The translations under genes and the position numbers were made by a program. A stretch of 64,000 nucleotides of DNA from Octopus sinensis (lineage: Eukaryota), in assembly GCF_006345805.1 (NCBI RefSeq), contig NC_043002.1, forward strand, positions 104,532,001 through 104,596,000. The letters run 5' to 3'. Below the pieces are notes generated by a model. It was not told the DNA's origin, did not search any database, and saw only the letters and a list, made by a program, of their open reading frames with translations. Of the stretch, positions 4,445-59,147 are shown in pieces; position 1 is the stretch's first letter; every line of letters begins with the position of its first letter.

Positions 4445-4940
4445 GTTCCATAATCGCCAGAGAAAAGCGAGGGAATTTTCTTTCTTGATGCTCAGGTAAA
4501 ACATTTGTAACATTGCTTCTCTCCAAGGTAAAGCAACAAAAAAAGAATTGCAGTTGCTGTAACGTTGTCTGACTTTGCTGCCACCATTCTTCCAGAAGGA
4601 CGAACAGCTCATTCTGCTGTTAAAATACCACTGACCCTGTTCACAAAGGACAGTCCAATTTGTAACATAAGCAAAGATTCAGGTTCAACAAAAGTGTTGT
4701 GCCAATGCCACCTTAACATTTCGGATGAATGCACCATGTCACATAGAGGTGCGATGCAAGCACTTGGTAAGACCTTACAAGACATCAGAAGCAACAATAA
4801 ATCTATGGGAGAAGTTACATTAGTTTTATCAGAAGACTTGAGACAGGCATTAACAGTCATTCTGAGACGAACAAGATCTGATGAAATAAAAGCATGCATT
4901 AAGTCTTCACATCTATCGAATAAAGTACTGAAATTCTCCT
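4445..4940 (+). mobile_element. Helitron PIF1-like helicase fragment (pseudogenised)
   Basis: SGKTF (Walker A remnant), AATILPEGRTAHSAVKIPL, CNISKDS, SDECTMSH, TLQDIRSN..MG, DLRQAL, RSDEIKACIKSS match the RepHel helicase motif series. Confidence 0.88.
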
Positions 4941-4974
4941 ACGGACCTCAGTGCTAAAGGCTTAGAATGAAGGC

Positions 4975-7542: not shown

Positions 7543-7709
7543 CTGCAACTAGGAGTACCCTGTTTCGTGACGATTACCAATTGCAGAACTGTGTTGCCAT
7601 TATTTGAACTGTCTTCCTTCGTCCTTTTCTCTGTTCTGTCTTTCTGTTCTGTCATTGTGTTTTTTTCTTATTGGACTTTGAACTTTTAGTTGAACTTTTT
7701 TTCAAAATC

Positions 7710-8907
7710 ATGGCAACAAAAGAAACCACTGCTTTGGAATGGGAGGTTGTCCCACCCAAGCAGTGGATTGAAAGTCTTGAGAAGAGCACGGTGGCTCTAC
7801 GAACCTATTCTAGGTCGCGTGGAGCTATCGCCCTCTTCGACAGGAGCACCATAGAGAAAGAGTTGGGGGACCACCTACCAACGATAAAGTTTATTTCTCG
7901 GGGGAGTAAATTTGCAACGGTGTGGTTGCTGTTTGGTACCCCCGAGGAAGCTAGCAGATTTGCTAGCGAGCCACTGGAGGGAGAGGAAATTTTGTTCCTC
8001 CCCTCGTATTGTGGCAGAATAGTAAAAAGAGCCTGGGTTTGTGGGCTGCCCCCGGGCACGGAGGCGGAATGGATCGAGAAGACCATCCGGCGAGGCCTGG
8101 GGGATAGCGGACCCAGGCTACGGTGTGAAAATGGCTCCCGCGGTCGCCTGGGAGGGGTCAAAGGCGACTTCGACCCTGTGGACACCGGTGGCCGTGGGAG
8201 AAATGAAATTCCCGGACTTCCTGAGAATGGCTGGGCACAGGTACCCGTGATACTCGAGGGACGCCCCCCCCAAGTATCACCTGTGCCTGAAGCCCGGACA
8301 TATCAAGAGGAATTGTCCCGGGGGCCGTGGTGGTGCCCCGGACCATGAAGGGGAAAAGGCGCCCGCCACCCCCTCATTGGAGGGGGAGCGGTGGAAGTCG
8401 TGGAGGAGGTTGCCTCCACGAAAAGAAAGAGACAGGAGCAACAATGGCTGCTCGCCAAAGAACGCTCAGGTGGCGGAGGGGGATAGCGATCCCCCGTGTC
8501 TGGTGACGGAGTCCCCTGGGTCAGCAGTCTCCCCCAAAAGAAGGAGGAGAAAAAGAAAGAAAGTCGGGGGCTGATATCCATGAGCCGCAGACGTTGGCTG
8601 GAACTGTGCCGCCAACGAAAGAACTGAACGTATTAGTCCTCTTCTATAGAGGAGGAGAAATTGAAAAAAAAAAATGATGGAAGAGTACCACAAGGGAGCT
8701 CCTTTAGCCTTCACACAGGACCCCGAATGGCCTCCGCAGATAGCTGTGGAGGCCGTGGCGTTCGACGTGACGCTTGGGCTAAAGGAGCTCAATGAAGATT
8801 ATAGCTTGGTCCCGGGCGACGCGAACTCGTAACTTGATTACGTTCTGAGGGAGCGTGTGTATGATGGTGGAGGGCGCGGGCACAAGCTATTCGAGGACGA
8901 TATGTAA
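7710..8907 (+). pseudogene. Frameshifted ORF1 (gag-like nucleic acid chaperone with zinc knuckle), ~390-400 aa reconstructed
   Basis: Joining frames gives MATKETT...PSYCGRIVKRAWVCGLPPG...FPDFLRMAGHRYPVILEGRPPKYHLCLKPGHIKRNCP; 8275-8316 is (C>Y)x2Cx4Hx4C, placed as in Tx1/L1 ORF1 proteins. Confidence 0.78.
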
Positions 8908-14982: not shown

Positions 14983-15012
14983 ATATATATATAATATATA
15001 ATATATATATAT

Positions 15013-15045
<33 letters not shown>

Positions 15046-15163
15046 GTAGGTCCCGGGTTGATTCGGGGTTAACCACAGTAAATAAGGTACTCAATAATCT
15101 TCCTGAAGATTTCTCTTGAATGAAACAGTTCTAGTCCTGTAGAAGCTCCTTCTATATAATAAA

Positions 15164-15204
<41 letters not shown>

Positions 15205-15325
15205 CCCGGGTTGATTCGGGGTTAACCACAGTAAATAAGGTACTCAATAATCTTCCTGAAGATTTCTCTTGAATGAAACAGTTCTAGTCCTGTAGAAGCT
15301 CCTTCTATATAATAAAATAAATATA
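15046..15325 (+). repeat. Tandem dimer (period 153 bp), each unit with a type I hammerhead fold
   Basis: Near-identical units at 15046 and 15199 separated by (TA)n; CUUC-CUGAAGA-UUUC ucuu GAAU-GAAA-CAG uucuaguc CUG-UA-GAAG at 15099-15145 and 15252-15298. Confidence 0.8.
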
Positions 15326-15354
15326 TATATATATATAATATATATATTATGTGT

Positions 15355-15800: not shown

Positions 15801-17345
15801 ACGGGAAGCTTTATGAAAATAGACAAAAGACGAAGGCAGGTGGAAAACAAGCAAACAATTGTATTAGTATGGCGCTCAGGAAATATAAATAAAACAAGTC
15901 TTTAACGTTTCGAGCCTACGCTCTTCAACAGAAAGATACACAGAGAGAAAAAAATCACAGAAAGAAGGAGAGAAAAAAAATGCGTGCAGTAACTAACGAA
16001 TCAACATGGCGATCTGATTTCGGCCAGAGGTCAAAGATCAAACATGAGACGCGAGAGCGAAATAAGGGGAGATAATAGGGTTGATAATAGGGTTGAATGA
16101 CCCTAGGAAAGGTCTGGACAGGCGTATGTATGGGGTTGGTGTATGTATTAGTATGTATTAGTATGTATTAGTACGTATTAGTATGTATAAGTGTGTGTGT
16201 GTGTATGAGAGAGTATAAGTGCGTATGAGGGGTCTGGACGTGTGTATGTATAGGGTTGGTGTATGTATTAGTATGTATTAGTATGTATTAGTACGTATTA
16301 GTATGTATTAGTTGTTGTATGTATTTGTATGGCACATCATATATGATGTGATGTGTAAAGTCGTGTGGTGTAGTGAGGAGAAGAGGGGGAGGGAGAGAAG
16401 GGGAGGGGAAGAAGAGGGGGAGGAGAGGGGGGAAGATGAGAGGGGAGAGAGAGAGGAGGGGGAGAAGGAATGGGAGGAGGAGGGGAGGAAGGAGGAAAGA
16501 GGGGAGGGGGAGAGAGAAGGGGAGTGAGGGAGCAGAGGGAAGAGGGAAGGAGGGAGGGAGAAAGAGGGAAGAAGGGGAGTAGGGGAGTAGGGGTGAAAGG
16601 ATGAAGGACTGAAGAAGTAGGGGGGAGGGGGGGAGGATAGGTGAGGAGGGGGAGGGGGTTAGATGAGGAGGGGGAGAGTTGAGACCAAATGGCGTATAAG
16701 AGCGAAGAGAGAAGATTAATCCCTGTTCACGGCGCAAACGGGAATCCGGATGGCCTCTGTGTAAGGACAAACCGAACACAGATAGGTGTTGCAAGGAGTG
16801 ACCGGTGGGGCAGAAATGGCGTGAGACCGATGTGTCGTTCGCAAGGTGGATGTCACGAAGGTGTTCCGCGAACCGGTCAGCCAAGCGGCGTCCCGTTTGT
16901 CCGATGTACAAGGAATTGCAGAGAGAGCAAGAGACGCAATAGATAATATTGCTGGAGGTGCAGGTGAAGGAGTGGATGATGGGATAGGGTCGATGGTGGG
17001 TGCTAGTGAGGCGGGTGGTGTTGGAGAGGTAAGGGCAAGTGCGGCAACGTGGGCGGGAGCAGGGGAACGAGCCGGGTTGGGATGCAGGGTCAGGGAAGGA
17101 GCTATATATATATATGTATTTATATAATATATATATATAAATGTGTATGTATGTATATATATATAGAGAGAGAGGGAGTTCACAAAAAAAAAGAAGACAT
17201 AGACAGGTGGTGCAGACAACAAACAGATGTATTAGTATAGCGCTCGGGATGTGAAAAAGTCTTTAACGTTCGAGCCTACGCTCTTCCATAGAAAGGAACA
17301 CAGAGAGAAACAAGGAGAGAAAATACAGAATGTGCAGTGGCTAGA
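15801..17345 (-). mobile_element. Penelope-like element: GIY-YIG 3' fragment between two direct terminal-repeat copies
   Basis: 16690-17103 reads PCSRPRCRTCPY...FTCTSSNIIYCVSCSLCNSLYIGQTGRRLADRFAEHLR...EQGLIFSLRSYTPFGLN; terminal repeat ACG(T)TTCGAGCCTACGCTCTTC near 15906 and 17266. Confidence 0.88.
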
Positions 17346-35914: not shown

Positions 35915-36785
35915 AGGAGAATGGAGAATTTGAACATTCAAATATCAAGTTTAGGTCTTTCACGAATTCCTTTTTATTGTGGTGGGGATAGGGATATCCT
36001 TAACTGATGCGGCCAAATATATTTTCTCCATTCACAGGTTATCTGTCTTTATTATTAGTTCCAGACGAAATTATTTTTCTAGTAAAAGTAGGGATTTAAT
36101 ATCCAGGTTGGTACCGTATTTCTCTGAGTAATATGCCAAGGCGAATGAAGCATTTAAACATTCAATATATAAAGACAAATCATGAATGACCAAAACATAA
36201 AGTTTAAAAGTTCAAATTCTTCATTCTCCTTATTATCAATATTGTACTTTACAATATTCAAATTTGTACCGGTAATAGGGCCATACCTAATAACCTAGGT
36301 GCGATTTTAGGAGTCGTTGAAAGAGGTACCTTCAGACCTTACATACGTAGGAGGGCTGAACATAATGATTTGGTATGGTATAATGTTCCCTTCAACTGTG
36401 CCATATACACATGACTGCGGCCTTGCTGGTGCATCGCCTTTATTCGAGGAAATCGACCGCAGGACTTATTCTTTGTAGTCCTATTTCTTATTTTATCGGT
36501 CTCTTTTGCCGAACCGCTAATTATGGTGACGTAAATTCACCAGCATCTGGAGCGGCAATTACAGAATTACAAGCATATACATGCATACATACATACATAC
36601 ATACATACATACATACAATTATTCGGTAGCCATGATAAAACTCCGAGTTTCGAATGCCGGGATGGAAATCCACGCCACCATCTCTTCAGTTATCCGGCCA
36701 TCGGAAAAGATGCTATGAAAATGACCCCCCCCCCAAATGAAAGATACCTCGATATTATGTATATTATGTATATTATGCATATATA

Positions 36786-42509: not shown

Positions 42510-44449
42510 TATTTCAAAACATTTGCCATAAAGGCAGTACACAGATTAAGTTAGCTTTGCGGGCTGGACGAGGACATTAATGAAGTGAATGATAATGAAA
42601 GACAGATGATAAGGATGGGAGAAGACAAAAAGCGCCCGCCGACTTTCGCTTCTCTAAAACATTGTTCTTTTTACAAAACGAGGTATTAAACCACTTTCAA
42701 TTTTTTAATTTTTGGACTTGGCAGTCCATTATTAATACTAACAGTTCAATAATTACATATCATCCTCGAAATAGCTTGTGCCCGCGCCCTCCACCATCAA
42801 ACACGCCTCCCTCAGAACGTAATCAAGTTCCGAGTTCGCGTCGCCCGGGACCAAGCTATAATCTTCATTGAGCTCCTTTAGCCCAAGCGTTACGTCGAAC
42901 GCCACGGCCTCCACAGCTATCTGCGGAGGCCATTCGGGGTCCTGTGTGAAGGCTAAAGGAGCTCCCTTGTGGTACTCTTCCATCATTTTTTTTTTCAATT
43001 TCTCCTCCTCTATAGAAGAGGACCAATACGTTCAGTTGTTTCGTTGGCGGCACAGTTCCCGCCAACGTCTGCGGCTCATGGATATCAGCCGCCCGACCTT
43101 TCTTTCTTTTTCTCCTCCTTCTTTTGGGGGAGACTGCTGACCCAGGGGACTCCGTCACCAGACACGGGGGATCGCTATCCCCCTCCGCCACCTGAGCGTT
43201 CTTTGGCGAGCAGCCATTGTTGCTCACCTGTCTCTTTCTTTTCGTGGAGGCAACCTCCTCCACGACTTCCACCGTCTCCCCCTCCAATGAGGGGGCGGCG
43301 GGCGCCTTTTCCCCTTCATGCTCCGGGGCACCACCACGGCCCCCGGGACAATTCCTCTTGATATGTCCGGGCTTCAGTCACAGGTGATACTTGGGTGGGG
43401 CGTTCGTCGAGTATCACCGGGTACCTGTGCCCAGCCATTCTCAGGAAGTCCGGGAATTTCATTTCTCCCACGGACACCGGTGTCCACAGGGTCAAAGTTG
43501 CCTTTGACCCCTCCCAGGCGACCGCGGGAGCCATTTTCACACTCAGTAGCCTGGTCCGCATCCCCCAGGCCTCGCCGGATGGTCTTCTCGATCCATTCCG
43601 CCTCCGTGCCCGGGGCAGCCCACAAACCCAGGCTCTTTTTACTTTTCTGCCACAATACGAGGGGAGGAACAAAATTTCCTCTCCCTCCAGTAGCTCGCTA
43701 GCAAATCTGCTAGCTTCCTCGGGGGTACCAAACAGCAACCACACCGTTGCAAATTTACTCCTCCGAGAAATAATCTTTATCGTTGGTAGGTGGTCCCCCA
43801 ACTCTTTCTCTATGGTGCTCCTGTCGAAGAGGGCGATAGCTCCACGCGACCTAGAATAGGTTCGTAGGACCACCGTGCTCTTCTCAAGACTTTCAATCCA
43901 CTGCTTGGGTGGGACAACCTCCCATTCCAAAGCAGTGGTTTCTTTTGTTGCCATGATTTTGAAAAAAAGTTCAACTAAAAGTTCAAAGTCCAATAAGAAA
44001 AAAGCACAATGACAGAACAGAAAGACAGAACAGAGAAAAGGACGAAGGAAGACAGTTCAAATAATGGCAACACAGTTCTGCAACTGGTAATCCTCACGAA
44101 ACAGGGTACTCCTAGTTGCAGCACACTTGGTTCTCCGTGGTAAATCCAAGCGAACAAATTAATTTTTGAGGAGGGGCTATGCCTCTTCAAAATACACAAT
44201 TCTCACTAAAAGGTGAGACAATAAATACGCCAACAGGCAGAACAAATGCATCCGAAGCAAAGTGAAGCTTATTACGCGCAGAAAAGTGTTAACACTAATT
44301 AACATTAATGCCAAAAAAGTATTAACGGCAAGCAATAAACCTCACTATGCTTCCAAAAATATCCAAAATGTCCTACCTGTTGCCGTAAAATGTTCAATAA
44401 TTCACGTTAACACGTGACATTTGCCGGAGCAAAAAACAGCACGTCTGTC
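42510..44449 (-). mobile_element. ~1.94-kb ORF1-only Tx1/L1-like element, copy 2
   Basis: Reverse complement of 7128-9161 lacking three 29-bp monomers; target duplication at 42493-42509 and 44450-44465. Confidence 0.85.
42753..43954 (-). pseudogene. Frameshifted ORF1 of copy 2; knuckle at 43348-43389 has an in-frame TGA
   Basis: Same protein segments as 7710-8907; YHL*LKPGHIKRNC. Confidence 0.78.
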
Positions 44450-53157: not shown

Positions 53158-53197
<40 letters not shown>

Positions 53198-53200
<3 letters not shown>

Positions 53201-56200
53201 ATTGTATAGAGGGCATTATTACACATAAATGCCTCACACTAGGAGGGACAGAGTCATTACTACCAAAATTATACTAATCATACCCAAATGCAGTTTTTCA
53301 AAGCAAGACATTTAAAAATGAATTATGTTCTGTATCACCGTGATTTCACATACAACTTGCGTCTAATGATCGTCAGCAGAACTGATTCTGAATACATCAT
53401 AAATAAACTAACCTTACGTAGCGAAGACGAACAGACAACTGCTCACTCCGGCCAAGCACATGGAATGTTTATAAATCATATATCCGGTAAATGGCGGGCT
53501 TTTTACGAACTGCATGTCGGGTAATGAAAAGTATTCGGAATAAGTTTAACAATTAGGACAATCTCTTAATAAGGGATCTTAACAAGAAATTATCAGGTAG
53601 CTAGCGTGAAAACCTCATAAAAGAAAAGAATCCGAAAATAATTTTTTTCTTCTGAACAAATTAATTATATCTATATTGTATAGAGGGCATTATTACACAT
53701 AAATGCCTCACACTAGGAGGGACAGAGTCATTACTACCAAAATTATACTAATCATACCCAAATGCAGTTTTTCAAAGCAAGACATTTAAAAATGAATTAT
53801 GTTCTGTATCACCGTGATTTCACATACAACTTGCGTCTATGATCGTCAGCAGAACTGATTCTGAATACATCATAAATAAACTAACCTTACGTAGCGAAGA
53901 CGAACAGACAACTGCTCACTCCGGCCAAGCACATGGAATGTTTATAAATATATATCCGGTAAATGGCGGGCTTTTTACGAAGCATGTCGGGTAATGAAAA
54001 GTATTTCGGAATAAGTTTAACAATAAGGACAATCTCTTAATAAGGGATCTTAACAAGAAATTATCAGGTAGCTAGCGTGAAAACCTCATAAAAGAAAAGA
54101 ATCGAAAAATAATTTTTTTCTTCTGAACAAATTAATTATATCTATATTGTATAGAGGGCATTATTACACATAAATGCCTCACACTAGGAGGGACAGAGTC
54201 ATTACTACCAAAATTATACTAATCATACCCAAATGCAGTTTTTCAAAGCAAGACATTTAAAAATGAATTATGTTCTGTATCACCGTGATTTCACATACAA
54301 CTTGCGTCTAATGATCGTCAGCAGAACTGATTCTGAATACATCATAAATAAACTAACCTTACGTAGCGAAGACGAACAGACAACTGCTCACTCCGGCCAA
54401 GCACATGGAATGTTTATAAATCATATATCCGGTAAATGGCGGGCTTTTTACGAACTGCATGTCGGGTAATGAAAAGTATTTCGGAATAAGTTTAACAATT
54501 AAGGACAATCTCTTAATAAGGGATCTTAACAGAAATTATCAGGTAGCTAGCGTGAAAACCTCATAAAAGAAAAGAATCCGAAAATAATTTTTTTCTTCTG
54601 AACAAATTAATTATATCTATATTGTATAGAGGGCATTATTACACATAAATGCCTCACACTAGGAGGGACAGAGTCATTACTACCAAAATTATACTAATCA
54701 TACCCAAATGCAGTTTTTCAAAGCAAGACATTTAAAAATGAATTATGTTCTGTATCACCGTGATTTCACATACAACTTGCGTCTAATGATCGTCAGCAGA
54801 ACTGATTCTGAATACATCATAAATAAACTACCTTACGTAGCGAAGAAACACAGACAACTGCTCACTCCGGCCAAGCACATGGAATGTTTATAAATCATAT
54901 ATCCGGTAAATGGCGGGCTTTTTACGAACTGCATGTCGGGTAATGAAAAGTATTTCGGAATAAGTTTAACAATTAAGGACAATCTCTTAATAAGGGATCT
55001 TAACAAGAAATTATCAGGTAGCTAGCGTGAAAACCTCATAAAAGAAAAGAATCCGAAAATAATTTTTTTCTTCTGAACAAATTAATTATATCTATTATGT
55101 ATAGAGGGCATTATTACACATAAATGCCTCACACTAGGAGGGACAGAGTCATTACTACCAAAATTATACTAATCATACCCAATGCAGTTTTTCAAAGCAA
55201 GACATTTAAAAATGAATTATGTTCTGTATCACCGTGATTTCAATACAACTTGCGTCTAATGATCGTCAGCAGAACTGATTCTGAATACATCATAAATAAA
55301 CTAACCTTACGTAGCGAAGACGAACAGACAACTGCTCACTCCGGCCAAGCACATGGAATGTTTATAAATCATATATCCGGTAAATGGCGGGCTTTTTACG
55401 AACTGCATGTCGGGTAATGAAAAGTATTTCGGAATAAGTTAACAATTAAGGACAATCTCTTAATAAGGGATCTTAACAAGAAATTATCAGGTAGCTAGCG
55501 TGAAAACCTCATAAAAGAAAAGAATCCGAAAATAATTTTTTTCTTCTGAACAAATTAATTATATCTATATTGTATAGAGGGCATTATTACACATAAATGC
55601 CTCACACTAGGAGGGACAGAGTCATTACTACCAAAATTATACTATCATACCCAAATGCAGTTTTTCAAAGCAAGACATTTAAAAATGAATTATGTTCTGT
55701 ATCACCGTGATTTCACATACAACTTGCGTCTAATGATCGTCAGCAGAACTGATTCTGAATACATCATAAAAAAACTAACCTTACGTAGCGAAGACGAACA
55801 GACAACTGCTCACTCCGGCCAAGCACATGGAATGTTTATAAATCATATATCCGGTAAATGGCGGGCTTTTTACGAACTGCATGTCGGGTAATGAAAAGTA
55901 TTTCGGAATAAGTTTAACAATTAAGGACAATCTCTTAATAAGGGATCTTAACAAGAAATTATCAGGTAGCTAGCGTGAAAACTCATAAAAGAAAAGAATC
56001 CGAAAATAATTTTTTTTCTGAACAAATTAATTATATCTATATTGTATAGAGGGCATTATTACACATAAATGCCTCACACTAGGAGGGACAGAGTCATTAC
56101 TACCAAAATTATACTAATCATACCCAAATGCAGTTTTTCAAAGCAAGACATTTAAAAATGAATTATGTTCTGTATCACGTGATTTCACATACAACTTGCG

Positions 56201-56935
56201 TCTAATGATCGTCAGCAGAACTGATTCTGAATACATCATAAATAAACTAACCTTACGTAGCGAAGACGAACAGACAACTGCTCACTCCGGCCAAGCACAT
56301 GGAATGTTTATAAATCATATATCCGGTAAATGGCGGGCTTTTTACGAACTGCATGTCGGGTAATGAAAAGTATTTCGGAATAAGTTTAACAATTAAGGAC
56401 AATCTCTAATAAGGGATCTTAACAAGAAATTATCAGGTAGCTAGCGTGAAAACCTCATAAAAGAAAAGAATCCGAAAATAATTTTTTTCTTCTGAACAAA
56501 TTAATTTATACTATATTGTATGAGGGGCATTATTACACATAAATGCCTCACATAGGAGGGGACAGAGTCATTACTACCAAAATTATACTAATCATACCCA
56601 AATGCAGTTTTTCAAAGCAAGACATTTAAAAATGAATTATGTTCTGTATCACCGTGATTTCACATACAACTTGCGTCTAATGATCGTCAGCAGAACTGAT
56701 TCTGAATACATCATAAATAAACTAACCTTACGTAGCGAAGACGAACAGACAACTGCTCACTCGGCCAAGCACATGGAATGTTTATAAATCATATATCCGG
56801 TAAATGGCGGGCTTTTACGAACTGCATGTCGGGTAATGAAAAGTATTTCGGAATAAGTTTAACAATTAAGGACAATCTCTTAATAAGGGATCTTAACAAG
56901 AAATTATCAGGTAGCTAGCGTGAAAACCTCATAAA
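53198..56935 (-). repeat. Left arm of hammerhead-ribozyme tandem array: ~7.9 x 473-bp monomers
   Basis: Hammerhead motifs (minus strand) start at 53327, 53801, 54272, 54747, 55221, 55694, 56167 and 56641; units differ mostly by 1-nt indels. Confidence 0.95.
53327..53382 (-). ncRNA. Type I hammerhead ribozyme (first left-arm copy)
   Basis: GUUCUG-CUGACGA-stem II-GAAA-UCAC G GUGA-UA-CAGAAC. Confidence 0.85.
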
Positions 56936-56938
56936 CCT

Positions 56939-58733
56939 CAGTTGTCTGTTCGTCTTCGCTACGTAAGGTTAGTTTATTATGATGTATTCAGAATCAGTTC
57001 TGCTGACGATCATTAGACGCAAGTTGTATGTGAAATCACGGTGATACAGAACATAATTCATTTTTAAATGTCTTGCTTTGAAAAACTGCATTGGGTATGA
57101 TTAGTATATTTTGGTAGTAATGACTCTGTCCCTCCTAGTGTGAGGCATTTATGTGTAATAATGCCCTCTATACAATATAGATATAATTAATTTGTTCAGA
57201 AGAAAAAAATTATTTTCGGATTCTTTTCTTTTATGAGGTTTTCACGCTAGCTACCTGATAATTTCTTGTTAAGATCCCTTATTAAGAGATTGTCCTTAAT
57301 TGTTAAACTTATTCCGAAATACTTTTCATTACCCGACATGCAGTTCGTAAAAAGCCCGCCTTTACCGGATATATGATTTATAAACATTCCATGTGCTTGG
57401 CCGGAGGGTGAGCAGTTGTCTGTTCGTCTTCGCTACGAGGTTAGTTTATTTATGATGTATTCAGAATCAGTTCTGCTGACGATCATTAGACGCAAGTTGT
57501 ATGTGAAATCACGGTGATACAGAACATAATTCATTTTTAAATGTCTTGCTTTGAAAAACTGCATTTGGGTATGATTAGTATAATTTTGGTAGTAATGACT
57601 CTGTCCCTCCTAGTGTGAGGCATTTATGTGTAATAATGCCCTCTATACAATATAGATATAATTAATTTGTTCAGAAGAAAAAAATTATTTTCGGATTCTT
57701 TTCTTTTATGAGGTTTTCACGCTAGCTACCTGATAATTTCTTGTTAAGATCCCTTATTAAGAGATTGTCCTTAATTGTTAAACTTATTCCGAAATACTTT
57801 TCATTACCCGACATGCAGTTCGTAAAAAGCCCGCCATTAACGGATATATGATTTATAAACATTCCATGTGCTTGGCCGGAGTGAGCAGTTGTCTGTTCGT
57901 CTTCGCTACGTAAGGTTAGTTTATTTATGATGTATTCAGAATCAGTTCTGGACGATCATTAGACGCAAGTTGTATGTGAAATCACGGTGATACAGAACAT
58001 AATTCATTTTTAAATGTCTTGCTTTGAAAAACTGCATTTGGGTATGATTAGTATAATTTTGGTAGTAATGACTCTGTCCCTCCTAGTGTGAGGCATTTAT
58101 GTGTAATAATGCCCTCTATACAATATAGATATAATTAATTGTTCAGAAGAAAAAAATTATTTTCGGATTCTTTTCTTTTATGAGGTTTTCACGCTAGCTA
58201 CCTGATAATTCTTGTTAAGATCCCTATTAAGAGATTGTCCTTAATTGTTAAACTTATTCCGAAATACTTTTCATTACCCGACATGCAGTTCGTAAAAAGC
58301 CCGCCATTTACCGGATATATGATTTATAAACATTCCATGTGCTGGCCGGAGTGAGCAGTTGTCTGGTTCGTCTTCGCTACGTAAGGTTAGTTTATTTATG
58401 ATGTATTCAGAATCAGTTCTGCTGACGATCATTAGACGCAAGTTGTATGTGAAATCACGGTGATACAGAACATAATTCATTTTTAAATGTCTTGCTTTGA
58501 AAAACTGCATTTGGGTATGATTAGTATAATTTTGGTAGTAATGACTCTGTCCCTCCTAGTGTGAGGCATTTATGTGTAATAATGCCCTCTATACAATATA
58601 GATATAATTAATTTGTTCAGAAGAAAAAAATTATTTTCGGATTCTTTTCTTTTATGAGGTTTTCACGCTAGCTACCTGATAATTTCTTGTTAAGATCCCT
58701 TATTAAGAGATTGTCCTTAATTGTTAAACTTAT
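56939..58733 (+). repeat. Right arm of the array: ~3.8 monomers in inverted orientation
   Basis: Reverse complement of the left-arm unit; predicted cleavage sites at 57046, 57519, 57992 and 58465 are each 473 nt apart; ends in (TA)n. Confidence 0.95.
56997..57052 (+). ncRNA. Type I hammerhead ribozyme (first right-arm copy)
   Basis: Stem I GUUCUG/CAGAAC 6 bp perfect; CUGACGA 57003-57009; stem II CAU/AUG plus GAC-GCAA-GUU; GAAA 57032-57035; stem III AUCA/UGAU; AUA triplet, cut after 57046. Confidence 0.87.
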
Positions 58734-59147
58734 ATATATATATATATATATAAATTCAGGGTGACTACTTGATAAATGTAAGCACCTGTATATGCCAGCT
58801 AGTTGCAGAGGTGCGAGAACAGAACACAAAGGATGTCGTGGTACACATGTTTCGAGCTTTATAAAACAACTTATTCTTACATCAATGTATAATCGACATA
58901 ACAGATAGTTTAAAGCCCTCTTCAGCCGTATGCAATTGCTACACCAAAGACTTGTATCACATTATGAAAGGTCTGAGAAAGAACATTTGGTATTAGTTAT
59001 AATGGTAGGAAAACTGAGTATCACTGAGAAAGTATGTTTGTAAATCTTTATAATCAAGTAGGTGTACAGTGTATTATTGGACTCCAAAAATCCGTCCATA
59101 CTGTTTTCTCACTCACTATATATATACATACATATATACATACATTC

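What the first reader, a model, noticed from the sequence alone, without database searches (positions are those of the whole stretch)
53198..58733. 473-bp tandem array in which the monomer encodes a hammerhead ribozyme (retrozyme-like satellite)
Seen: on the strand opposite the 78-aa ORF the monomer reads GUUCUG CUGACGA UCAUUAGAC-GCAA-GUUGUAUGU GAAA UCAC G GUGA UA CAGAAC. That gives the complete CUGANGA/GAAA core, a perfect 6-bp stem I that extends through a bulge (GAAU/AUUC), a GNRA-capped stem II, stem III and an AUA cleavage triplet. There are 12 copies (8 minus, 4 plus), 11 with an intact core, and the plus-arm cut sites are exactly 473 nt apart. Established: tandem type I hammerhead repeats (newt satellite 2, schistosome Sm-alpha, Dolichopoda pDo500, metazoan non-LTR retrozymes) self-process multimeric transcripts to monomers and in several cases circular RNAs. 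Inference: this is such a family making a ~473-nt (circ)RNA. I do not recognise it from cephalopods but cannot confirm novelty. The U.U pair closing stem II is non-canonical.
Basis: partly seen in the sequence, partly recalled or inferred. Interest (0 to 1): 0.95.

Follow-up and report, generated by a model that had tools for sequence, protein, structure and literature searches.

The report
Likely hammerhead retrozyme tandem array
Twelve copies of a non-coding repeat of about 474 bases each carry a plausible self-cutting hammerhead RNA motif; this looks like a new example (probably in a cephalopod) of the known animal 'retrozyme' elements that make small circular RNAs, but self-cutting is untested.

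Summary
Two head-to-head tandem arrays (53192-56935 on the minus strand, 56939-58733 on the plus strand) contain 12 hammerhead-like motifs, 11 of them with an intact CUGANGA/GAAA/UH core. Plus-arm cut sites are 473 nt apart.

Evidence for a real hammerhead:
- A motif this good arose in 3 of 722,060 shuffled monomers.
- It meets or exceeds the helix lengths of three experimentally validated retrozyme hammerheads.
- The odd U.U pair at the base of helix II also occurs in the cleaving axolotl HHR_Amex2.
- Two copies co-fold into a double hammerhead.
- The cut-to-cut RNA of the hammerhead strand folds far better than shuffles (z -5.8). The opposite strand does not (z -2.1).

Evidence for a mobile-element insertion:
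- The two arms have identical consensus sequences.
- Both outer ends abut (TA)n.
- The 5' ends meet in the middle, as in Penelope-like element (PLE) insertions.

Evidence against or missing:
- Rfam Hammerhead_1 scores 14.4 bits against a threshold of 34.
- Helix II is imperfect.
- No related copy could be found, so conservation and covariation are untested.
- There are no RNA data.

Verdict: probably a non-LTR, PLE-type retrozyme. It is a new member of a known kind and of moderate interest.

The parts
53192..56935 (-). Minus arm: 7.9 tandem units (cut-to-cut lengths 471-475 nt) with the hammerhead sense on the minus strand. The 3' (outer) end merges into (TA)n at about 53192-53203. The 5' (inner) end is truncated at monomer sequence UUUAUGAGG.
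   Evidence: TRF; BLAST of the monomer; ends read.
56939..58733 (+). Plus arm: 3.8 tandem units of 473 nt with the hammerhead sense on the plus strand. The 5' (inner) end is truncated at CAGUUGUCUG. The 3' (outer) end ...GUUAAACUUAU merges into (TA)n.
   Evidence: TRF.
56929..56945 (.). Head-to-head junction of the two arms, where the 5' ends meet at different monomer positions. There are about 3 nt of filler (56936-56938), and a short duplicated AACCUCA lies next to it.
   Evidence: Sequence read.
56991..57059 (+). Representative hammerhead (type I):
- Helix I extension: GAAU 56991-94 paired with AUUC 57056-59
- Loop 1: CA 56995-96 and AUA 57053-55
- Helix I: 56997-57002 paired with 57047-57052
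- Core CUGACGA: 57003-57009
- Helix II: 57010-57031
- GAAA: 57032-57035
- Helix III: 57035-57038 paired with 57042-57045, with loop CGG
- A17: 57046, with predicted cleavage between 57046 and 57047
   Evidence: Rfam Hammerhead_1 aligns helix I and CUGACGA at 56997-57052.
57470..57525 (+). Hammerhead copy with an intact core; cut after 57519.
57945..57998 (+). Hammerhead copy with CU deleted from CUGANGA, so predicted inactive; nominal cut after 57992.
   Evidence: row P57964.
58416..58471 (+). Hammerhead copy with an intact core; cut after 58465.
53327..56696 (-). Eight minus-strand hammerhead copies:
- 53327-53382
- 53801-53855 (1-nt deletion in helix II)
- 54272-54327
- 54747-54802
- 55221-55275 (1-nt deletion in helix II)
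- 55694-55749
- 56167-56221 (1-nt deletion in the helix III loop)
- 56641-56696
53162..53202 (.). Left flanking (AT)n microsatellite abutting the 3' end of the minus arm.
   Evidence: TRF.
58731..58752 (.). Right flanking (TA)n microsatellite abutting the 3' end of the plus arm.

Best explanation
The block is one insertion of a non-autonomous, non-coding retroelement of the metazoan 'non-LTR retrozyme' kind.

How it would work (all inferred):
1. Each unit of about 474 nt encodes a type I hammerhead ribozyme on one strand.
2. Read-through transcription of that strand gives multimeric RNA.
3. Hammerheads, alone or as double hammerheads formed by two copies through their quasi-palindromic helix III, cut after the A of AUA.
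4. This releases units of about 474 nt with 5'-OH and 2',3'-cyclic phosphate ends.
5. The ends are held together by helix I at the base of a highly paired, branched rod and are ligated into a circular RNA.

How the copy got here (inferred): a Penelope-like element (PLE) reverse transcriptase/GIY-YIG endonuclease primed on UA-rich microhomology in a (TA)n target. Reverse transcription ran round and round a circular or multimeric template, producing the tandem copies. A strand or template switch produced the second, inverted arm.

Shown here: the motif and its improbability by chance, the tandem context, the strand-specific RNA fold, the array architecture, and the flanks.

Inferred only: transcription, cleavage, circularisation, and the PLE as mobiliser.
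For: 1. Complete core and three helices in 11 of 12 units.
2. Chance: 3 of 722,060 shuffled monomers reach this quality and 16 of 722,060 reach a looser standard. There was no hit of this quality in the other 58 kb of the window.
3. The same descriptor recovers validated retrozyme hammerheads from coral, mussel and axolotl. Like the candidate, those have a 6-bp helix I followed by loop 1. Their loop 2 follows a 4-'bp' helix II, where the candidate has an internal loop.
4. U.U at the base of helix II and a UA cleavage site also occur in axolotl Ax353/HHR_Amex2. That ribozyme self-cleaves 22% in 1 h and much better as a dimer (PMC7229834).
5. The hammerhead secondary structure costs only 1.6 kcal/mol relative to the MFE (-9.0 against -10.6). 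It passes the criterion of MFE below -5 kcal/mol used in bioRxiv 10.64898/2026.07.22.740005.
6. Two copies co-fold with helices I and II as modelled and an intermolecular 5+5-bp helix III: -32.3 against 2 x -10.6 kcal/mol.
7. The cut-to-cut RNA of the hammerhead strand folds to -127.6 kcal/mol, z -5.72. Folded as a circle it gives z -5.78, with 67% of bases paired and 20 G.U pairs. The opposite strand gives z -2.4 (linear) and -2.1 (circular).
8. GC is about 34%. ORFs are 78 aa or shorter, broken in most copies, and have no homologue.
9. Both arms have the same consensus and equal within-arm and between-arm divergence. Both outer ends abut (TA)n, although (TA)n runs of 5 or more repeats cover only 3.7% of the window. 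The 5' ends meet head to head at different monomer positions. This matches the tandem/inverted, 5'-truncated, microsatellite-biased insertions of PLEs (PMC8557442).
10. A PLE-type GIY-YIG endonuclease fragment lies in the same window.
Against: - Rfam Hammerhead_1 gives 14.4 bits against a gathering score of 34, and it aligns only helix I and CUGACGA.
- The 10.1/11.1 position is U.U rather than the usual G-C.
- Helix II has a 2x2 internal loop and one G.U pair.
- Helix III has a probability of only 0.05-0.08 in the monomer ensemble.
- The 86-nt motif region is no more stable than shuffles (z +0.65).
- The 12 copies differ only by singleton changes, mostly 1-nt indels. The hammerhead shows no significant depletion of changes: 0 of 21 substitutions and 5 of 33 indel cells, in 12% of the columns.
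- No other copy was found in the window or in any collection or paper searched. There is therefore no conservation or covariation evidence and no evidence of a multi-copy family.
- There are no expression data.
- No similarity between the monomer and the PLE fragment in the window was detected.
Confidence: 0.66

Rival explanations
1. This is an ordinary tandem repeat or young satellite in which a hammerhead-like string arose by chance. It has no ribozyme activity, and the array grew by DNA-level processes such as unequal exchange or fold-back replication.
For: - The motif scores below the Rfam threshold.
- Helix II is imperfect, with U.U at position 10.1/11.1.
- The motif region has no excess stability.
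- There is no comparative support.
- In a genome of several gigabases, a handful of chance motifs of this quality are expected somewhere. This is an extrapolation from 0.003 per 58 kb.
Against: - The chance of such a motif inside one given monomer is about 4e-6.
- It coincides with four independent retrozyme hallmarks: tandem units, low GC, a strand-specific stable fold on the same strand, and a PLE-like insertion architecture in (TA)n.
- In-situ DNA amplification does not explain why both outer ends sit exactly at (TA)n, or why the arms are equally diverged.
Confidence: 0.2
2. The hammerhead is genuine by descent, but the block is not an independent retrozyme. It would be either the tandem pseudo-LTR part of an autonomous Penelope-like element, or a dead relic whose ribozyme no longer cleaves efficiently.
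For: - PLE pseudo-LTRs carry type I hammerheads and form tandem/inverted structures (PMC8557442; PMC7229834).
- Xenopus retrozymes are close relatives of PLE pseudo-LTRs.
- A PLE endonuclease fragment is present in the window.
- The weakened helix II could reduce activity.
Against: - The array has twelve units and no RT or endonuclease ORF anywhere in or next to it.
- BLAST finds no similarity between the monomer and the PLE fragment at about 16.7-17.1 kb.
- The units are 98-99% identical with intact cores, which points to a recent, not decayed, insertion.
Confidence: 0.11
3. The tandem array was carried or generated by a DNA rolling-circle element (Helitron/Helentron type), as described for some mollusc satellites, and the hammerhead is irrelevant.
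For: - A PIF1-like helicase fragment is in the window.
- Helitrons insert at AT dinucleotides (my own knowledge), and the array is flanked by (TA)n.
Against: - The helicase fragment is 48 kb away.
- The array ends (…CAAUAUA and …AACUUAU in the sense orientation) lack the 5'-TC and 3'-CTRR termini and the 3' hairpin of Helitrons. That expectation rests on my own knowledge, checked against the sequence.
- Both outer ends are 3' ends of oppositely oriented arms, which a single Helitron would not give.
Confidence: 0.03

Closest known systems
Metazoan non-LTR retrozymes (Cervera and de la Pena, NAR 2020, PMC7229834), for example coral Amil224, mussel Mg353, and axolotl Rtz_331 and Rtz_353
   Same: - A type I hammerhead in every unit of a short, AT-rich, non-coding tandem repeat.
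- A 6-bp helix I followed by an internal loop 1.
- A short, (quasi-)palindromic helix III that allows double hammerheads.
- A monomer RNA predicted to be highly self-paired.
- Co-occurrence with PLEs.
- U.U at the base of helix II and UA at the cleavage site, as in axolotl HHR_Amex2.
   Different: - The monomer (about 474 nt) lies just above the 150-450 bp range reported for these repeats, though within the stated 150 to more than 1000 nt circRNA range.
- Helix II is long (9 positions per strand) and has a 2x2 internal loop where canonical motifs have loop 2.
- There is no sequence similarity to the mussel or coral units.
- Cleavage and circles are not demonstrated.
- Only one locus is known.
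Pseudo-LTR hammerheads and insertion architecture of Penelope-like elements (PMC4209133, PMC8557442)
   Same: - Partial tandems with an inverted, 5'-truncated copy joined head to head.
- Insertion into microsatellites, (TA)n being reported for Naiads.
- A type I hammerhead in the repeated part.
   Different: - There is no RT/GIY-YIG ORF in the unit.
- PLE hammerheads are described as 'minimal' variants, whereas here helix III has 4 bp and helix I is extended.
- No 30-40 bp 'tail' is seen.
Classical hammerhead satellites: newt satellite 2, Schistosoma Sm-alpha, Dolichopoda pDo500 (PMC2837043)
   Same: Tandem units of a few hundred bp, each with a type I hammerhead. These satellites have since been re-interpreted as retrozymes.
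   Different: - Those motifs are the basis of Rfam RF00163 and score well against it, whereas this one scores 14.4 bits.
- Those are abundant genome-wide families with documented transcripts and cleavage.
Plant LTR retrozymes and hammerhead viroids and viroid-like satellite RNAs
   Same: Hammerhead-processed multimeric RNA giving a highly paired circular RNA.
   Different: - They carry type III hammerheads.
- Retrozymes of this kind have LTR/PBS/PPT features.
- They have high GC.
- Viroids have no DNA copy.
- None of these features is present here.

Membership tests
Hammerhead ribozyme, type I | Conserved core C3U4G5A6N7G8A9 ... G12A13A14 ... A15.1-U16.1, with H17 (not G) at the cleavage site | tested here: met
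   CUGACGA, GAAA, A15.1-U16.1 and A17 are present in 11 of 12 copies. One copy lacks C3U4.
Hammerhead ribozyme, type I | Three helices around the core, with helix I open and helices II and III closed by loops | tested here: met
   - Helix I: 6 bp plus a 4-bp extension.
- Helix II: 3+3 bp with a GCAA loop.
- Helix III: 4 bp with a CGG loop.
This structure is 1.6 kcal/mol above the MFE. Helix probabilities in the monomer ensemble are 0.86-0.97 for helix I, 0.39-0.77 for helix II and 0.05-0.08 for helix III. All three helices form in the MFE of two co-folded copies.
Hammerhead ribozyme, type I | G10.1-C11.1 pair at the base of helix II (quasi-conserved) | tested here: not met
   The position is U.U. 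The same exception occurs in axolotl HHR_Amex2, which cleaves (PMC7229834), so this lowers but does not exclude membership.
Hammerhead ribozyme, type I | Reaches the curated score of Rfam RF00163 (or another hammerhead model of clan CL00010) | tested here: not met
   No hit at gathering score. The score is 14.4 bits against 34, E 0.43 on 86 nt. There was no hammerhead hit at E of 10 or below when 601 nt were searched.
Hammerhead ribozyme, type I | Loop 1 / loop 2 tertiary contact | tested here: inconclusive
   - The geometry fits. Helix I has 6 bp before an internal loop, and helix II has 4 positions before an internal loop, as in the validated controls.
- The contact nucleotides could not be compared.
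- Mussel retrozyme hammerheads also lack the archetypal contacts.
Hammerhead ribozyme, type I | Conservation of the core and covariation in the helices among homologues | tested here: inconclusive
   The 12 copies are 98-99% identical with singleton changes only. No homologue was found elsewhere.
Hammerhead ribozyme, type I | Mg2+-dependent site-specific self-cleavage | not testable with these tools
   This needs in vitro transcription of monomer and dimer constructs.
Metazoan non-LTR retrozyme | Type I hammerhead in at least two consecutive units of a tandem repeat of about 150-450 bp (circles up to more than 1000 nt) | tested here: met
   There are 12 units of 471-475 nt in two arms, with intact motifs in consecutive units.
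Metazoan non-LTR retrozyme | Low GC (below 45%), and no LTR, PBS or PPT and no coding capacity | tested here: met
   - GC is 0.34.
- The longest ORF is 78 aa, is intact in 4 of 12 units and has no homologue.
- The units are simple head-to-tail repeats.
Metazoan non-LTR retrozyme | Monomer RNA predicted to be stable and highly self-paired | tested here: met
   The sense strand gives z -5.72 (linear) and -5.78 (circular), with 67% of bases paired. The antisense strand gives z -2.41 and -2.09.
Metazoan non-LTR retrozyme | Co-existence with Penelope-like elements in the genome | tested here: met
   A 5'-truncated PLE-type CxxC-linker plus GIY-YIG fragment lies at about 16690-17090 (-). The Pfam score is sub-threshold (19.5 against 22.6), while the homologue P0021 passes.
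Metazoan non-LTR retrozyme | Many genomic copies, and expression as linear and circular RNA | not testable with these tools
Nothing was found in the collections that are.

The most novel reading that the evidence does not exclude
This would be the first retrozyme family described in cephalopods. It would use a non-standard hammerhead design, with U.U at 10.1/11.1 and a long helix II whose internal loop takes the place of loop 2, and it would work mainly as a double hammerhead. The locus would also be an unusually clean 'fossil' of a single integration event: rolling reverse transcription of a circular or multimeric retrozyme RNA, primed by UA microhomology on both sides of a (TA)n target, with a template switch making the head-to-head arms. 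That would be direct structural evidence that PLE-type machinery mobilises retrozymes.
Probability: 0.3. Interest if true: 0.6.

Novelty: new member of a known kind. Interest (0 to 1): 0.45.

Why it matters
- Taxonomic reach: if active, it extends hammerhead retrozymes and ribozyme-made circular RNAs to cephalopods. The open-access papers searched here did not turn up any report of one.
- A second natural U.U design: it adds another natural hammerhead with a U.U closing pair and a long, interrupted helix II. This bears on how far motif descriptors and the Rfam model under-detect real ribozymes.
- Testing mobilisation by PLEs: the insertion anatomy consists of two equally young inverted arms, outer ends at (TA)n microhomology, and variable inner 5' ends. 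It gives a concrete, testable picture of how these non-autonomous elements may be integrated by Penelope-like machinery. That link has so far been argued mainly from co-occurrence and pseudo-LTR similarity.
- What it does not change: it adds no new kind of system to those already known.

Tried and rejected
1. Rfam at gathering score over the whole window gave nothing. At E of 10 or below over 601 nt there was no ribozyme family on either strand. Only on 86 nt did a weak Hammerhead_1 hit appear.
2. Within-array conservation or covariation is uninformative, because all variants are singletons and mostly 1-nt indels, possibly assembly errors.
3. The search for other copies found nothing:
   - BLAST of the monomer against the window.
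   - Exact look-ups of three monomer ORFs.
   - A protein homology search with the 78-aa ORF.
   - Two metagenome scans, one with a non-hammerhead 24-mer and one with the hammerhead.
   - A prokaryotic-genome scan and a viral-contig scan.
   - A full-text search for the sequence in papers.
4. The 78-aa ORF as a gene is rejected. It is intact in 4 of 12 units and has no homologue.
5. An autonomous PLE is rejected, because there is no RT or EN ORF in or beside the array.
6. A Helitron-borne array is rejected, because the termini do not fit.
7. An ENA contig carrying a related PLE endonuclease (L001) holds no hammerhead motif and no similarity to the monomer.
8. Literature searches for a hammerhead or retrozyme report in cephalopods found none. 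Cephalopods are mentioned only for Naiad PLE remnants.

Full report
**Observation**

Tandem Repeats Finder reports two adjacent arrays. One spans 53192-56935 (period 474, 7.9 copies, 98% matches). The other spans 56939-58733 (period 473, 3.8 copies) and is the reverse complement of the first.

The 56-nt string GUUCUG-CUGACGA-UCAUUAGAC-GCAA-GUUGUAUGU-GAAA-UCACGGUGAU-A-CAGAAC occurs unchanged eight times. An alignment of all units shows 12 copies, 8 on the minus strand and 4 on the plus strand:
- One copy (57945-57998) has lost the CU of CUGANGA.
- Three others each carry a 1-nt deletion, two in helix II and one in the helix III loop.

The plus-arm cut sites follow A57046, 57519, 57992 and 58465, and are exactly 473 nt apart. 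Cut-to-cut lengths in the minus arm are 471-475 nt.
- Helix III cannot close on a 1-nt loop. It is a 4-bp stem (A-U, U-A, C-G, A-U) with a CGG loop.
- Helix II is interrupted. It reads U.U, 3 bp, a 2x2 internal loop, 3 bp, then GCAA.
- The monomer length is not fixed at 473 nt.

**Is it more than chance?**

I wrote a type I descriptor with these requirements:
- a helix I next to the core;
- CUGANGA;
- a helix II in which one mismatch at the base is allowed;
- GAAA;
- an A15.1-U16.1 pair plus further helix III pairs, with a 3-8 nt loop;
- H17.

Results:
- At the observed quality (helix I of at least 6, II of at least 3, III of at least 4 bp) it hits 3 of 722,060 dinucleotide shuffles of the monomer, scanned on both strands as a circle. 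At 5/3/3 it hits 16.
- On shuffles of the other 58 kb of the window, the expectation is 0.003-0.007 per shuffle. The real 58 kb has no hit at that quality.
- At looser settings (4/2/2) the descriptor recovers three of four experimentally validated retrozyme hammerheads taken from the supplement of PMC7229834: coral Amil224, mussel Mg353 and axolotl Ax353. The fourth, Ax330, has a 1-bp helix III and needs a laxer setting.

The candidate equals those controls in helix I (6 bp, then an internal loop). It exceeds them in helix III. It interrupts helix II after four positions, where they have loop 2.

**The curated model disagrees**

- Rfam finds nothing at gathering score in the window.
- It finds no ribozyme at E of 10 or below in 601 nt.
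- When only 86 nt are searched, Hammerhead_1 scores 14.4 bits against a threshold of 34. It aligns helix I and CUGACGA and skips helices II and III as local ends.
- The 86-nt region is no more stable than shuffles (z +0.65).

I could not score the validated U.U-type axolotl motif with the same model, so I cannot say how much of the deficit is a limitation of the model.

**The non-canonical pair**

The U.U at 10.1/11.1 is the main structural worry. [quoted passage not shown] Its construct Rtz_353 self-cleaves 22% in one hour, and much more efficiently as a dimer. The construct sequence reads CUGAUGA-U-GCC-CACUA-GGC-U-GAAA-CACGUG-UA. It therefore also shares the UA cleavage site.

**Folding**

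- The hammerhead secondary structure of a 69-nt segment has -9.0 kcal/mol against an MFE of -10.6. Helix I has probability 0.86-0.97, helix II 0.39-0.77 and helix III only 0.05-0.08.
- Two copies co-fold to -32.3 kcal/mol, against 2 x -10.6. In that structure helices I and II form exactly as modelled. The quasi-palindromic AUCAC-G-GUGAU segments form an intermolecular 5+5-bp helix III, which is a double hammerhead. The helix III segments of the four validated retrozyme motifs behave the same way.

**The whole unit**

- The cut-to-cut RNA of the hammerhead strand folds to -127.6 kcal/mol. Shuffles give -95.9 +/- 5.5, so z is -5.72, and no shuffle out of 100 does as well.
- In that fold the 5' CAGAAC and the 3' GUUCUG (helix I) close a long branched rod.
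- Folded as a circle, z is -5.78, with 67% of bases paired and 20 G.U pairs.
- The complementary strand gives only z -2.41 (linear) and -2.09 (circular), with 9 G.U pairs.

An RNA-specific, strand-specific fold on the very strand that carries the motif is what the retrozyme model predicts. A chance motif in a DNA satellite would not predict it.

**Coding capacity**

GC is 0.34. The longest ORF has 78 aa, lies on the opposite strand, is intact in 4 of 12 units and has no homologue.

**Architecture of the locus**

- In the sense orientation the two arms are joined 5' end to 5' end at 56936-56938. The junction falls at different monomer positions in the two arms.
- Their 3' ends point outward. 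Each runs straight into a (TA)n tract...CAAUAUA|(UA)n on the left and ...AACUUAU|(AU)n on the right.
- (TA)n runs of 5 or more repeats number 121 and cover 3.7% of the window, so exact abutment at both ends is very unlikely to be coincidence.
- The arms have identical consensus sequences. Divergence within arms equals divergence between arms, at about 10.7 differences per 476 columns. This indicates one source and one time of origin.
- PMC8557442 describes PLE insertions as 5'-truncated partial tandems, often with an inverted 5'-truncated copy joined at the 5' end, and with microsatellite insertion bias; (TA)n is reported for Naiads.
- PMC7229834 and bioRxiv 10.64898/2026.07.22.740005 argue that PLEs mobilise non-LTR retrozymes.
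- The window also holds a 5'-truncated PLE-type endonuclease fragment at about 16690-17090 (-), reading ...CSRPRCRTC...YIGQTGRRLADRFAEH.... GIY-YIG scores 19.5 bits there, the homologue P0021 passes the cut-off, and there are 24 homologues.

I infer, but have not shown, the following. Integration was primed by UA microhomology on a circular or multimeric RNA template. Repeated passage of the reverse transcriptase round that template made the tandem copies. A template or strand switch made the second arm.

**What could not be done**

No other copy exists in the window. Nothing related was found in any of the following:
- exact ORF look-ups;
- the protein homology search;
- two metagenome scans;
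- the prokaryotic-genome and viral-contig scans;
- a search for the sequence in paper texts.

The variation among the 12 copies is all singleton, mostly 1-nt indels. The hammerhead holds 0 of 21 substitution cells and 5 of 33 indel cells in 12% of the columns, which is not significant. Conservation, covariation, copy number, transcription and cleavage therefore remain untested.

**Host**

The only homologue of a 225-aa ORF at 7671-8348 is an Octopus sinensis protein at 53% identity. This makes a cephalopod origin plausible but does not prove it. Literature searches found no report of a hammerhead or retrozyme in cephalopods. Molluscan (mussel) retrozymes are known.

**Verdict**

The best explanation is a recent insertion of a non-LTR, PLE-type retrozyme whose type I hammerhead probably works best as a dimer (confidence about 0.66). 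The rivals are:
- a chance motif in an ordinary repeat (about 0.20);
- a PLE pseudo-LTR derivative or inactive relic (about 0.11);
- a Helitron-type array (about 0.03).

It is a new member of a known kind. It is interesting mainly for its variant helix II and for the unusually legible insertion anatomy.

Noticed in passing
window 15011-15352 (+), units at about 15047-15150 and 15200-15300: Two copies (period 153) of a unit of about 100 bp are embedded in (TA)n. Each has a looser type I hammerhead-like motif: CUUC CUGAAGA U-UUC-UCUU-GAA-U GAAA CAG-UUCUAGUC-CUG U A GAAG. It again has U.U at the base of helix II, and it has a palindromic CUAG in the helix III loop. Motifs of this looser quality are expected 0.043 times per 58 kb in shuffles. 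Rfam gives no hammerhead hit. It could be a second, minimal PLE- or retrozyme-type hammerhead, or chance.
   Followed up: partly
window about 16690-17090 (-): A 5'-truncated Penelope-like element endonuclease fragment (CxxC linker plus GIY-YIG...YIGQTGRRLADRFAEH...), followed by a low-complexity GA-rich repeat. There are 24 homologues at 40-67% identity, all from ENA metagenome assemblies. My descriptor found no hammerhead next to it.
   Followed up: partly
window 4565-4957 (+): A PIF1-like helicase fragment (Pfam PF05970, E 4e-23), probably a Helitron remnant.
   Followed up: no
window 7671-8348 (+) and 43316-43993 (-): Two closely similar 225-aa ORFs lie in inverted orientation 35 kb apart. 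They have no Pfam domain. The only homologue of the 7671-8348 copy, the one searched, in 5.8 billion proteins is Octopus sinensis LOC115225585 at 53% identity. This is probably an unclassified repeat-encoded protein.
   Followed up: partly
window 56922-56945: At the head-to-head junction, the heptamer AACCUCA occurs twice, 9 nt apart (AAAACCTCATAAACCTCAGTTG). This suggests a microhomology-mediated template switch when the two arms were joined.
   Followed up: no
whole window: Microsatellite density is very high. There are 121 (TA)n runs of 5 or more repeats, covering 3.7% of the window, plus many (TG)n, (TATG)n, (AGAT)n and (AAG)n tracts. These produce long spurious low-complexity ORFs.
   Followed up: no
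window about 36630-36690 (-): A third hit of the loose hammerhead descriptor: GAUAA CUGAAGA ... GAAA CUCGGAGUU U U AUC. It has only 2 bp in helix II and is probably chance.
   Followed up: no
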